A stretch of 52,913 nt of DNA, taken from contig NC_068993.1 in assembly GCF_001194135.2 (NCBI RefSeq), forward strand, positions 11,018,427 to 11,071,339, read 5' to 3'. Made by a program: the position numbers and the translations under genes. How positions within the stretch are numbered: position 1 is the first letter of the stretch; every line of letters begins with the position of its first letter. The notes below the pieces were generated by a model, which had not been told where the DNA came from, ran no database searches, and was given only the letters and a program-made list of their open reading frames with translations. Shown one piece after another: positions 22,591 through 23,949 of the stretch. The stretch comes from Octopus bimaculoides (Eukaryota).

Positions 22591-23422
22591 TATTGTGTTT
22601 CGCCAGAGGAGAGCAACACCTTCTTTACGACGAATGCGTGTTCATAACACACTCGAATCGTTAGCGTAAGGGACTCTGGGACAATCAGTGTATCGACATC
22701 AATGTGTCTGGTCAACCAGATGCAACCCAGACTGATGACTCTAACAAGTATCTAGCCCTTTTCCTGATAACTTCAAGGAACATATTACGAATAAATATGT
22801 AAGTCATCTCACTGCTCACAATGAAAACAAACGATTTGTTATCAGTTGGCATATATCAAATCGAATCAGCAAGCATTTGTTAAGCAAAGATTTTGTAATG
22901 AGTAACTCGTCGTTTAGACACATCAACGAAAGCGTTGTATGTAAGTGGCTAGCTCTATTTATGTGGATTTTGGCCAATATTAGAAATAAATATTCTGAAT
23001 TGGAAGAATCAATATAGCTGCGGACAAAATGCCCTGTAGGATTTATTCAGTTATCTGCGCATTAAATTTAGCTTCTGCCAAATTCCACTCTCACTGAGTT
23101 CAACTTTGCCTTCCGTCGTTTTTCTTTCTTTTCTTTCTAGAAAAAATTGGTTGGACTTAAAATTGGAGGGGTATCGGTCCCGCCTGGTTTAGAATGCCGA
23201 AGACATATTGTGTACCATGATGGTGTACCCATGCTACAATAAGGCGCCCAGGGTTCAAAAATGGCAGGTTGTCATAAATATTTTTTTGACCAAATTCCAC
23301 TTGGTCACACTGGGTTTTCGTTTTTGCGACGGTGGATAAAACAGGGGTTTGTTGTGTACTGCTGGCGAGTTTTCCTCTAGAAACCCGGCCCTAACTAAAT
23401 CTGAAATATTGTGTACATTGTG

Positions 23423-23581
23423 GGCATATAGCCTAGTGGTTAAGAGCGCGGGCTACTAACCCCAAGATTCCGAGTTCGATTCCAGGCAGTGATCTGAATA
23501 ATAATAATAATAATAATAACAATAATAATAATAACAACAACAACAATAATAATAATAATAATATTAATAATAATAATAATG

Positions 23582-23624
<43 letters not shown>

Positions 23625-23819
23625 TAATAATAATAATAATAACATCGAAAAATACCTTAGGAATGAGAACTCAGGTTCGAAATTCCCCCAAGACACCTGT
23701 TGAAGGCTGGAGGGTATATCAACCGAAACGTTGTGTTAACAACAAACAAGATGAGGACAAATATCCGTCAAATGTACATAATGTAAATAATTCCTCATCT
23801 CTTAAATACAGAACTGCAT
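23423..23819 (+). mobile_element. tRNA-headed SINE with internal (AAT)n and hammerhead-bearing tail, flanked by an 86-bp direct repeat
   Basis: Head ggcataTAGCCTAGTGGttaag...gaGTTCGATTCcagg; (AAT)n at about 23498-23642; HHR fold at 23692-23737; 9-bp stem agatgagga/tcctcatct (23749-23757, 23792-23800). Flanks 23337-23422 and 23820-23905 match at 79 of 86 positions. Confidence 0.85.
23692..23737 (+). ncRNA. Minimal type-I hammerhead ribozyme-like motif (A6U core variant)
   Basis: Stem I gacac/gtgtt; core CTGTTGA plus A; stem II ggctg/caacc (1 mismatch) with a 10-nt loop; GAAA; ACGT palindrome; triplet GTT ending at 23732. Confidence 0.65.
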
Positions 23820-23949
23820 TAAAATAGGGGTTTGTTGTGTACTGGTGGCAAGGTTTCGTCTAGAAACCCGGCTCTAACTAAATCTGAAATATTGTGTATA
23901 TTGTGTCTATGACGAATATCATTATTCTTTTACGTTGTTGATAAAGTTA

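What the first reader, a model, noticed from the sequence alone, without database searches (positions are those of the whole stretch)
23337..23905. tRNA-headed SINE carrying a hammerhead ribozyme tail, bracketed by an 86-bp direct repeat
Seen: a Pol III-type head (A box TAGCCTAGTGG, B box GTTCGATTC, anticodon-like loop CTACTAA), an internal (AAT)n, a complete minimal type-I hammerhead fold (23692-23737) and a 9-bp hairpin. The 397-bp element sits between two copies of an 86-bp sequence (79/86 identical). Known: minimal HHRs with an ACGT palindrome are typical of Penelope-like pLTRs and non-LTR retrozymes; SINE tails usually come from their partner retrotransposon; ordinary LINE TSDs are about 7-20 bp, although RTE-clade elements can make much longer ones. 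Inference: this may be a Pol III-driven, self-cleaving non-autonomous element mobilised by Penelope-like machinery (a SINE-retrozyme chimera), a pairing that to my knowledge is poorly documented. The long repeat would be its insertion footprint.
Basis: partly seen in the sequence, partly recalled or inferred. Interest (0 to 1): 0.82.

Follow-up and report, generated by a model that had tools for sequence, protein, structure and literature searches.

The report
Octopus tRNA-SINE with hammerhead tail
This is one well-preserved copy of a short octopus retrotransposon that joins a tRNA-like promoter head to a tail encoding a small self-cleaving (hammerhead) RNA motif; the design is already known from blood-fluke elements, and this copy's ribozyme carries two damaging mutations.

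Summary
All the described features are at the stated coordinates and exceed chance. The 86-bp direct repeat is real (79/86). The tRNA-type A and B boxes have the correct spacing. The (AAT)48 run and the 9-bp hairpin are present.

The hammerhead-like fold is not complete in this copy. The core reads CUGUUGA (A6 is U) and helix II has one C·A mismatch.

Related copies settle most of the interpretation. A translated-tail search found 89 related ORFs, and I fetched DNA for 12 of them (19 contigs). The family consensus is a canonical helix-III-less type-I hammerhead. The G5-N6-N7 codon is GAN in 90 of 100 aligned stretches and is never GTN.

Head, AAT linker and tail co-occur in an independent locus (L008, two copies). 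The 86-bp repeat is absent from every other copy. Its borders coincide with the family's 5' and 3' ends, so it is a target-site duplication.

Inverted partial copies lie beside direct copies in three loci, which resembles Penelope-like insertion.

The design is not new, because schistosome Sm-alpha/Sj-alpha elements and animal retrozymes share it. The Penelope partnership and cleavage remain inferred. The 86-bp duplication is unusual.

The parts
23337..23422 (.). Left copy of the 86-bp target-site duplication
   Evidence: 79/86 identical to 23820-23905. Not found in any related copy. Ends where the family's 5' terminus GGGCAT begins. Starts with T, with TTTTT at 23321-23325 (read).
23423..23496 (+). 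tRNA-derived Pol III-type head (A box 23429-23439, B box 23474-23483)
   Evidence: A/B-box pair with tRNA spacing: 2 observed against 0.005 expected. Homologous heads in L008 are 61/74 and 59/68 identical. Not a functional tRNA.
23497..23642 (+). Internal (AAT)n linker, expanded in this copy
   Evidence: TRF reports period 3, 48.7 copies, 93% matches. In L008 the same position holds only AATAATAAC. 8 of 10 loci have a microsatellite directly upstream of the tail.
23643..23819 (+). Tail module shared by the family (homology about 23645-23815)
   Evidence: 89 representative ORFs match its translation. 70-85% DNA identity to copies in L001-L019. 133/137 identical to the leave-one-out consensus. 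Exonised copy in O. bimaculoides XP_052825882.1.
23692..23737 (+). Minimal type-I hammerhead motif, disabled in this copy
   Evidence: Layout: helix I 23692-96/23733-37; core CUGUUGA 23697-23703 (U6 at 23700); bulged A 23704; helix II 23705-10/23719-24 with C·A at 23707/23722; GAAA 23725-28; C-G-U-U 23729-32; predicted cleavage after 23732. Descriptor scan and shuffles. Family consensus is canonical.
23749..23800 (+). 3' hairpin with a 9-bp stem (23749-23757 / 23792-23800) whose loop holds a 9-nt tandem ATGTAMATA x2 (23772-23789)
   Evidence: Present in the MFE and centroid folds. The stem and the tandem are conserved in several copies, and some copies end just after the tandem.
23820..23905 (.). 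Right copy of the 86-bp target-site duplication
   Evidence: Starts 5 nt after the family's 3' end ...AGAAC.

Best explanation
The region 23423-23819 is one copy of a composite tRNA-derived SINE family of octopus. The copy is about 97% identical to the family consensus.

Proposed anatomy and mechanism:
- A roughly 75-nt tRNA-like head carries internal Pol III A and B boxes. It would start transcription at the element's first base.
- A short AAT linker follows, expanded here to 146 bp.
- A roughly 170-nt tail follows. It encodes a helix-III-less type-I hammerhead ribozyme, then a 3' hairpin.
- In the family consensus the hammerhead is canonical: GACAC CUGAYGA A GGCUGG AGRGUAUA UCAGCC GAAA CG UU|GUGUU. 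It would cleave only when two motifs pair through the ACGU palindrome.
- In this copy two substitutions (A6 to U at 23700, G11.3 to A at 23722) should abolish or strongly reduce cleavage.
- The RNA was reverse-transcribed into a staggered break, duplicating 86 bp of target (23337-23422 = 23820-23905).
- The supplier of reverse transcriptase and endonuclease is most likely a Penelope-like element, whose 3' hammerhead-bearing region the tail mimics.

Shown: the family exists, head and tail co-occur, the consensus hammerhead is canonical, and the 86-bp repeat is flanking DNA.
Inferred: Pol III transcription, self-cleavage and the Penelope-like partner.
For: Family and consensus:
- The 61-aa tail translation hits 89 representative ORFs, several with 2-3 tandem stretches.
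- Core-encoding codons are the best conserved. P19 is 87/100. The G5-N6-N7 codon is E or D (GAN) in 90/100 and never V. E/D21 is 96/103, G22 89/104, P28 88/109, K29 107/110 and C31 101/110. R30 is 77/109, with H and C variants as expected from CpG decay.
- DNA alignments of other copies give CTGAYGA and a fully paired helix II, GGCTGG/TCAGCC.
- The window tail is 133/137 identical to the leave-one-out consensus.

Head-tail linkage:
- L008 holds a direct and an inverted full copy.
- L001 has a GGGCATATGGC... remnant, then an A-rich repeat, then the tail.
- The (AAT)n/tail junction AATAACAT is shared by several copies.

Target-site duplication:
- The repeat is absent from all other copies.
- Its borders match the family termini.
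- Repeat divergence (about 4% per copy) matches tail divergence from the consensus (2.9%).

Penelope-like features:
- The motif has the bulged nucleotide after A9, the G10.1-C11.1 pair, a long helix II, a short helix I and a palindromic 15.2-16.2, exactly as described for Penelope pLTR hammerheads (PMC4209133).
- Inverted partial copies abut direct copies in L001, L003 and L008, a structure described for Penelope-like insertions (PMC8557442).
Against: - No Penelope-like ORF or pLTR was available for comparison.
- Published Penelope duplications are 8-10 bp and RTE ones 7-15 bp, so 86 bp is atypical for both.
- There is only one hammerhead per unit and none inside the duplicated flank, so a monomer transcript has no partner motif in cis.
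- U6 lets the core pair as an extended hairpin instead of the hammerhead junction.
- AT-rich trinucleotide repeats, a 3' hairpin and a short 3' tandem repeat are also typical of LINE-dependent SINEs.
- The target starts with T downstream of a T run, as reported for RTE-related SINEs.
- Only three loci show the sequence upstream of the linker, and one of them (L001) holds only a 25-nt head remnant (p about 0.04).
- The species of the Logan and ENA samples is unknown.
Confidence: 0.7

Rival explanations
1. Same composite SINE family, but mobilised by a LINE (for example an RTE-clade element) rather than by a Penelope-like element. On this reading the hammerhead is a passenger or a processing module.
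For: - Other octopus SINEs in the window end in AAT-type repeats.
- The duplication starts with T, 12-16 nt downstream of TTTTT. This is the signature reported for RTE-related SINEs.
- The 3' hairpin plus a 9-nt tandem resembles the 3' ends of stringent LINE/SINE pairs.
- A LINE ORF2 fragment with zf-RVT lies in the window.
Against: - The AAT repeat is internal, not terminal.
- No similarity between the tail and any LINE 3' end in the window.
- Paired inverted and direct copies that overlap in content are a Penelope-like hallmark, not a twin-priming pattern.
- Hammerheads of this helix-III-less type are described for Penelope-like elements and retrozymes.
- RTE duplications are mostly 7-15 bp.
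Confidence: 0.2
2. Chance nested insertion. A simple tRNA-SINE (head plus AAT tail) and an independent hammerhead-bearing repeat happen to lie side by side.
For: - A 75-nt head followed by (AAT)n would be a complete 'simple SINE'.
- Copies L003 and L005 have the tail without head or linker.
- Penelope-like elements prefer microsatellite targets.
Against: - Head, linker and tail are contiguous in two further copies in L008, with a linker of only 9 nt.
- The linker/tail junction is conserved across copies.
- No duplication flanks 23423-23642 alone (read).
- The 86-bp duplication brackets head plus tail exactly.
- L003 and L005 look like ordinary 5' truncations.
Confidence: 0.05
3. The 86-bp repeat is not a target-site duplication. 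It is either part of the element (a pseudo-LTR or partial tandem) or a local duplication unrelated to the insertion.
For: - Penelope-like elements typically insert as partial tandems that create terminal direct repeats.
- 86 bp is far outside normal duplication lengths.
- The right copy ends in a 9-nt tandem ATATTGTGT x2 (23889-23906).
Against: - The repeat sequence is absent from all 19 related contigs.
- After ...AGAAC every copy continues with unrelated sequence.
- Both repeat borders coincide with the family termini.
- Similarity does not extend beyond the repeat.
Confidence: 0.1

Closest known systems
Schistosome Sm-alpha / Sj-alpha SINE-like retroposons (Ferbeyre et al. 1998; Laha et al. 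2000; as reviewed in PMC6765202 and PMC8490949)
   Same: Short non-coding retroposon that combines a Pol III promoter with a type-I hammerhead. Dispersed and sometimes tandem copies.
   Different: No sequence comparison was made here. The schistosome ribozyme is a full hammerhead with loop-loop contacts. This one is the helix-III-less minimal type. The octopus head is a clear tRNA derivative at the 5' end, separated from the ribozyme by an AAT linker.
Minimal hammerheads of Penelope-like element pseudo-LTRs (Cervera & de la Pena 2014, PMC4209133)
   Same: Bulged nucleotide between A9 and 10.1. G10.1-C11.1 pair. Helix II of 6 bp. Helix I of 5 bp. No helix III loop. Palindromic ACGU, so cleavage is expected only as a dimer. 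Inverted and direct paired copies.
   Different: The element has no reverse transcriptase/endonuclease ORF and carries a tRNA-derived head. Homology of the tail to an actual octopus pLTR was not tested.
Metazoan non-LTR retrozymes (PMC7761336; bioRxiv 10.64898/2026.07.22.740005)
   Same: Non-autonomous, hammerhead-bearing, and thought to depend on Penelope-like elements. A related family in L014/L015 has 2-3 tandem units of about 125 nt, each with a canonical hammerhead.
   Different: The window copy is a single unit with one motif, has a Pol III head, and is flanked by a long duplication. Circular RNA was not examined.
Ordinary tRNA-derived SINEs of octopus (Ohshima & Okada 1994; SINEBase, PMC3531059)
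   Same: tRNA-related head with A and B boxes, body, short length, interspersed copies, 5'-truncated copies.
   Different: The simple repeat is internal rather than terminal. The body encodes a ribozyme motif. The duplication is 86 bp rather than about 7-20 bp.

Membership tests
tRNA-derived SINE (SINEBase definition, PMC3531059) | 5' head derived from a Pol III-transcribed RNA, with internal A and B boxes | tested here: met
   A box at 23429 and B box at 23474 with tRNA spacing: 2 sites against 0.005 expected. The head is conserved in L008.
tRNA-derived SINE (SINEBase definition, PMC3531059) | [quoted passage not shown] | tested here: inconclusive
   The element is 397 bp. 89 representative ORF clusters and 10 distinct DNA loci point to many copies, but no genome-wide count was possible.
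tRNA-derived SINE (SINEBase definition, PMC3531059) | 3'-terminal tail of simple repeats | tested here: not met
   The (AAT)n is internal. The element ends ...TTAAATACAGAACTGCAT. Only a 9-nt unit repeated twice lies near the 3' end.
Hammerhead ribozyme, type I minimal (Penelope type) | Conserved core CUGANGA ... GAAA ... U-H | tested here: not met
   This copy has CUGUUGA (U6 at 23700). The family consensus does meet it.
Hammerhead ribozyme, type I minimal (Penelope type) | Helices I and II, G10.1-C11.1, extra nucleotide after A9, palindromic 15.2-16.2 | tested here: met
   Helices differ but stay paired among copies. One C·A mismatch in this copy.
Hammerhead ribozyme, type I minimal (Penelope type) | Self-cleavage at the predicted site | not testable with these tools
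   Needs in vitro transcription of monomer and dimer, or RNA end mapping.
Hammerhead ribozyme, type I minimal (Penelope type) | Match to the curated Rfam hammerhead models | tested here: inconclusive
   No hit at E<=10. The canonical units in L014 are also missed, so the models do not cover this class.
Non-autonomous derivative of a Penelope-like element / non-LTR retrozyme | Sequence relationship of the tail to the pLTR of an autonomous element in the same genome | not tested
   No Penelope-like element lies in the window and none was reachable in the collections.
Non-autonomous derivative of a Penelope-like element / non-LTR retrozyme | Partial-tandem or inverted-plus-direct insertion structure | tested here: inconclusive
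   Absent in the window. Present in L001, L003 and L008, and as tandem units in L014/L015.
Non-autonomous derivative of a Penelope-like element / non-LTR retrozyme | Short target-site duplication (8-10 bp in rotifer elements) | tested here: not met
   The duplication here is 86 bp (comparison).
RTE-dependent SINE | 3' end shared with an RTE LINE, and 7-15 bp duplications that start with T downstream of a T run | tested here: inconclusive
   The T start and upstream TTTTT are met at one site. The length is not met. No RTE 3' end was available to compare.

The most novel reading that the evidence does not exclude
tRNA-headed, Pol III-driven SINEs whose tails copy the hammerhead-bearing 3' region of Penelope-like elements may form an unrecognised SINE class. 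It would be shared by octopus and at least one other organism (ENA sample ERZ21867824). There, relatives with 70-74% tail identity carry 2-3 tandem ribozyme units. In this class the hammerhead would serve as the processing or reverse-transcriptase recognition module, and integration could produce duplications as long as 86 bp.
Probability: 0.3. Interest if true: 0.65.

Novelty: new member of a known kind. Interest (0 to 1): 0.5.

Why it matters
SINEs are normally paired with LINEs. The partner of animal hammerhead-bearing repeats (retrozymes) is still argued from indirect evidence.

A family with three clear features would give a tractable case: an unmistakable tRNA-derived Pol III head, a canonical Penelope-type hammerhead in its consensus, and Penelope-like paired insertions. 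It could be used to test whether Penelope-like elements mobilise Pol III transcripts, and what the ribozyme does in that cycle.

It would extend the schistosome Sm-alpha design to cephalopods. The single copy in this window is an inactive, dated insertion of no special consequence. Its 86-bp duplication is a useful oddity for studying how far apart the two strand breaks can lie.

Tried and rejected
- First reading: 'not a hammerhead'. Helix II looked unpaired under canonical numbering, Rfam gave no hit and the fold z-score was -0.5. I withdrew this after re-parsing with the Penelope minimal architecture and running shuffles.
- 'U6 is a natural core variant', suggested by a second CUGUUGA motif at 19745-19781. 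I rejected this for the present family, because 90/100 relatives encode A6 and none encodes U6. The second site remains unexplained.
- Inferring position 6 from the exonised copy XP_052825882.1. Unreliable, because similarity stops abruptly on both sides, most likely at splice junctions.
- Looking for more copies: inside the window, by exact-pattern scans of metagenome contigs and viral contigs, by sequence strings in papers, and in a paper supplement. All gave nothing.
- A word-indexed protein search with 11 concatenated frames of head, repeat and tail gave nothing. The LINE ORF search gave only three short contigs.
- DNA of the dystrobrevin locus was not retrievable because the gene range is 132 kb.
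- A MAFFT alignment of the two window motifs was wrong, so I built no covariance model.
- Similarity of the upstream flank to the end of the repeat is not significant.
- A TRIM/Helenus-type LTR element was considered and rejected. There are no TG..CA ends and no primer-binding site, the tRNA-like part lies outside the repeat, and that group is not reported in cephalopods.
- Duplication lengths in other copies could not be measured. Most Logan contigs break in the linker microsatellite. L001 offers only a weak 9-10 bp candidate.

Full report
**What is in the window**

The 86-bp direct repeat is real: 23337-23422 and 23820-23905 are 79/86 identical (family D11). Similarity stops at its borders on both sides.

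Between the two copies lie 397 bp:
- A 74-nt segment carries TAGCCTAGTGG at 23429 and GTTCGATTCC at 23474. These positions and this spacing are those of tRNA A and B boxes. Such a pair occurs twice in the window, against 0.005 expected in 200 dinucleotide shuffles. The other instance is an unrelated SINE at 11317-11370.
- ARAGORN and Rfam do not call the segment a tRNA, and it does not fold as a cloverleaf. This is normal for SINE heads.
- (AAT)48.7 follows at 23497-23642.
- A 177-nt tail follows, with a 9-bp hairpin pairing 23749-23757 with 23792-23800.
- No TTTT lies inside the element on the + strand. The first is at 23928.

**The hammerhead claim**

My first reading was negative. The core is CUGUUGA rather than CUGANGA, helix II looked unpaired, the fold is unremarkable, and Rfam gives nothing even at E<=10.

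Cervera & de la Pena (PMC4209133) describe the Penelope-type minimal hammerhead differently. It has an extra nucleotide between A9 and 10.1, a conserved G10.1-C11.1 pair, a long helix II, a 4-5 bp helix I, no helix III loop and a palindromic 15.2-16.2. With that architecture the motif parses well:

| Element | Coordinates | Sequence |
|---|---|---|
| Helix I | 23692-96 / 23733-37 | GACAC / GUGUU |
| Core | 23697-23703 | CUGUUGA |
| Bulged A | 23704 | A |
| Helix II | 23705-10 / 23719-24 | GGCUGG / UCAACC (one C·A) |
| Second core box | 23725-28 | GAAA |
| 15.2, 16.2, 16.1, 17 | 23729-32 | C-G-U-U |

The predicted cleavage site is after 23732.

A descriptor of this kind that allows one core mismatch finds two sites in the window and none in 100 dinucleotide shuffles. 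A looser scan finds the same two sites and no canonical one. The motif is therefore not chance, but in this copy the invariant A6 is U.

Rfam also fails on fully canonical relatives, so its silence says nothing.

**Related copies**

No second copy lies in the window. Exact-pattern scans of the public DNA collections found nothing.

The tail is open in one reading frame, so I searched with its translation:
- A word-indexed search found one protein, XP_052825882.1, dystrobrevin beta isoform X1 of Octopus bimaculoides. Its N-terminal 23 residues, EGWRVYQPKCCVNNKQDEDKYPS, match 23702-23770. This is an exonised copy at another locus.
- An exhaustive HMMER search found 89 representative ORFs. One is O. 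bimaculoides A0A0L8FV75.
- For 12 of the hits the encoding contigs could be fetched, as L001-L019.

**The family consensus is a canonical hammerhead**

In the tail's frame the core nucleotides fall in fixed codon positions. Across 110 aligned stretches:

| Codon | Nucleotides encoded | Result |
|---|---|---|
| P19 | C2.1-C3-U4 | Pro in 87/100 |
| Position 20 | G5-N6-N7 | Glu or Asp (GAN) in 90/100, never Val |
| Position 21 | G8-A9 | Glu/Asp in 96/103 |
| G22 | G10.1-G10.2 | Gly in 89/104 |
| P28 | C11.2-C11.1 | Pro in 88/109 |
| K29 | A13-A14 | Lys in 107/110 |
| R30 | C15.2-G16.2 | Arg in 77/109; His 13 and Cys 10, as expected from CpG decay |
| C31 | U17-G1.1 | Cys in 101/110 |

DNA alignments give the consensus GACAC CTGAYGA A GGCTGG AGRGTATA TCAGCC GAAA CG TT|GTGTT, with a fully paired helix II.

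The window's tail is 133/137 identical to the leave-one-out consensus. The other copies are 73-82% identical. The two hammerhead defects, A6U at 23700 and G11.3A at 23722, are among the window copy's few private substitutions.

Mutations at conserved core positions are expected to reduce or abolish cleavage (Ruffner et al. 1990, as cited in PMC8490949). With U6 the core can also zip into an extended hairpin.

**Head and tail belong together**

L008 is the same locus seen in five samples. It holds two copies:
- A direct copy, with head at 228-301 (61/74 identical to the window head) running through AATAATAAC into the tail at 295-446 (129/151).
- An inverted full copy immediately upstream, head to head, with head 59/68 and tail 108/144.

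L001 has GGGCATATGGCGCGACTAGATTGCG, a likely deleted head (p about 0.04). An A-rich repeat follows, then the tail.

In 8 of 10 distinct loci a microsatellite lies directly upstream of the tail, and the junction AATAACAT is shared. Most Logan contigs break in that repeat, so the head could be checked in only three loci. L003 and L005 lack linker and head and look 5'-truncated.

**The 86-bp repeat is a target-site duplication**

- The repeat sequence is absent from all 19 contigs.
- Three copies begin with GGGCAT preceded by unrelated sequence. Four copies end ...TTAAATAYAGAAC followed by unrelated sequence.
- In the window these termini lie 0-1 nt and 5 nt from the repeat borders.
- The repeat copies differ by 8.1%, or about 4% each. 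The tail differs by 2.9% from its consensus, consistent with one event.
- Using the O. vulgaris calibration in PMC13282606 (Jukes-Cantor distance 0.065, about 18 My), this is roughly 10 My. This is an inference.

A length of 86 bp is far above the 7-15 bp reported for RTE elements and the 8-10 bp for rotifer Penelope elements. I could not measure other copies.

**Which machinery**

For a Penelope-like partner:
- The hammerhead type matches Penelope pLTR hammerheads.
- Three loci (L001, L003, L008) have an inverted, often 5'-truncated copy abutting a direct copy. This layout is described for Penelope-like insertions (PMC8557442).
- Because the two copies overlap in content, this is not L1-style twin priming.

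For a LINE partner:
- The element has AAT repeats, a 3' hairpin and a short 3' tandem.
- The target starts with T, 12-16 nt after TTTTT.

No Penelope ORF is in the window. I put the Penelope-like partner at about 55-60%.

**Wider family**

Contigs from ENA sample ERZ21867824 (L014, L015) carry 2-3 tandem units of about 125 nt. Each unit has CACCTGAAGAAGGCCGGAGGACATATCGGCCGAAACGTTGTGG. These units are 70-74% identical to the window tail over about 100-120 nt.

In L014 a segment with a B-box match (GGTTCAATCC) lies about 160 nt upstream of the first unit. I read this off the sequence and did not test it further. ARAGORN finds no tRNA there.

**Comparison and verdict**

The design, a Pol III promoter plus a type-I hammerhead in a short non-coding retroposon, is that of schistosome Sm-alpha/Sj-alpha (PMC6765202). 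It overlaps with animal non-LTR retrozymes, now argued to depend on Penelope-like elements.

I file this as a new member of that kind, in cephalopods, with a clear tRNA-derived head. The copy in the window is inactive as a ribozyme.

Limits:
- The species of the Logan and ENA samples is unknown.
- Copy number, duplication lengths and the partner element are untested.
- Cleavage is untested.

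Noticed in passing
window 19745-19781 (+): Second minimal hammerhead-like motif, TCTTT CTGTTGA A GAGC GTA GCTC GAAAC GT C AAAGA. It has perfect helices and the same U at position 6. Its sequence context is otherwise unrelated (no similarity beyond CTGTTGAAG and CGAAACGT). 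It belongs to another family. Whether the shared U6 is coincidence is unexplained.
   Followed up: partly
Octopus bimaculoides XP_052825882.1 (P0001), matching window 23702-23770: A copy of the hammerhead-bearing tail is exonised. It forms 23 N-terminal residues of the predicted 94-aa 'dystrobrevin beta isoform X1'. Similarity ends abruptly on both sides, as expected at splice junctions.
   Followed up: partly
L014 10085-10340 and L015 10030-10380, 9725-9823(-): A related family in ENA sample ERZ21867824 has 2-3 tandem units of about 125 nt, each with a canonical CTGAAGA...GAAACGTT hammerhead. One inverted unit lies nearby. Many ORFs of this family start MANGIRTGDPRGFNKG.
   Followed up: partly
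window 11040-11380(-) and 28477-28856(-): Two copies of a different, longer tRNA-derived SINE, 82% identical over 189 bp. Both end in short AAT-type repeats. Further tRNA-like heads lie at about 35080-35141(-) and 19987-20060(-).
   Followed up: partly
window 17826-18602 (+): C-terminal fragment of a non-LTR retrotransposon ORF2 with a zf-RVT domain (Pfam E=2e-7), interrupted by an assembly gap. An A-rich 3' end lies near 18680-18710.
   Followed up: partly
window 17703-17856, 29224-29374 (+), 33049-33190 (-): Three copies, about 90% identical, of a roughly 150-bp repeat. A weak fourth match lies at 40026-40063. Not classified.
   Followed up: no
L008 164-279: The head-to-head inverted SINE pair forms a long hairpin that scores as miRNA-precursor-like in Rfam (MIR5380 42 bits, mir-9 32 bits, both below gathering). 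This is an artefact of the inverted repeat, not evidence of a miRNA.
   Followed up: no
window, 14 runs of N (e.g. 1076-1277, 4802-5261, 6171-6848, 7872-8463, 13574-14035, 17015-17410, 29585-29969, 43003-43430): The window is a gap-rich draft assembly dominated by microsatellites. Repeat structure next to the gaps, for example at 19852-19861 beside the second hammerhead-like motif, cannot be trusted.
   Followed up: no
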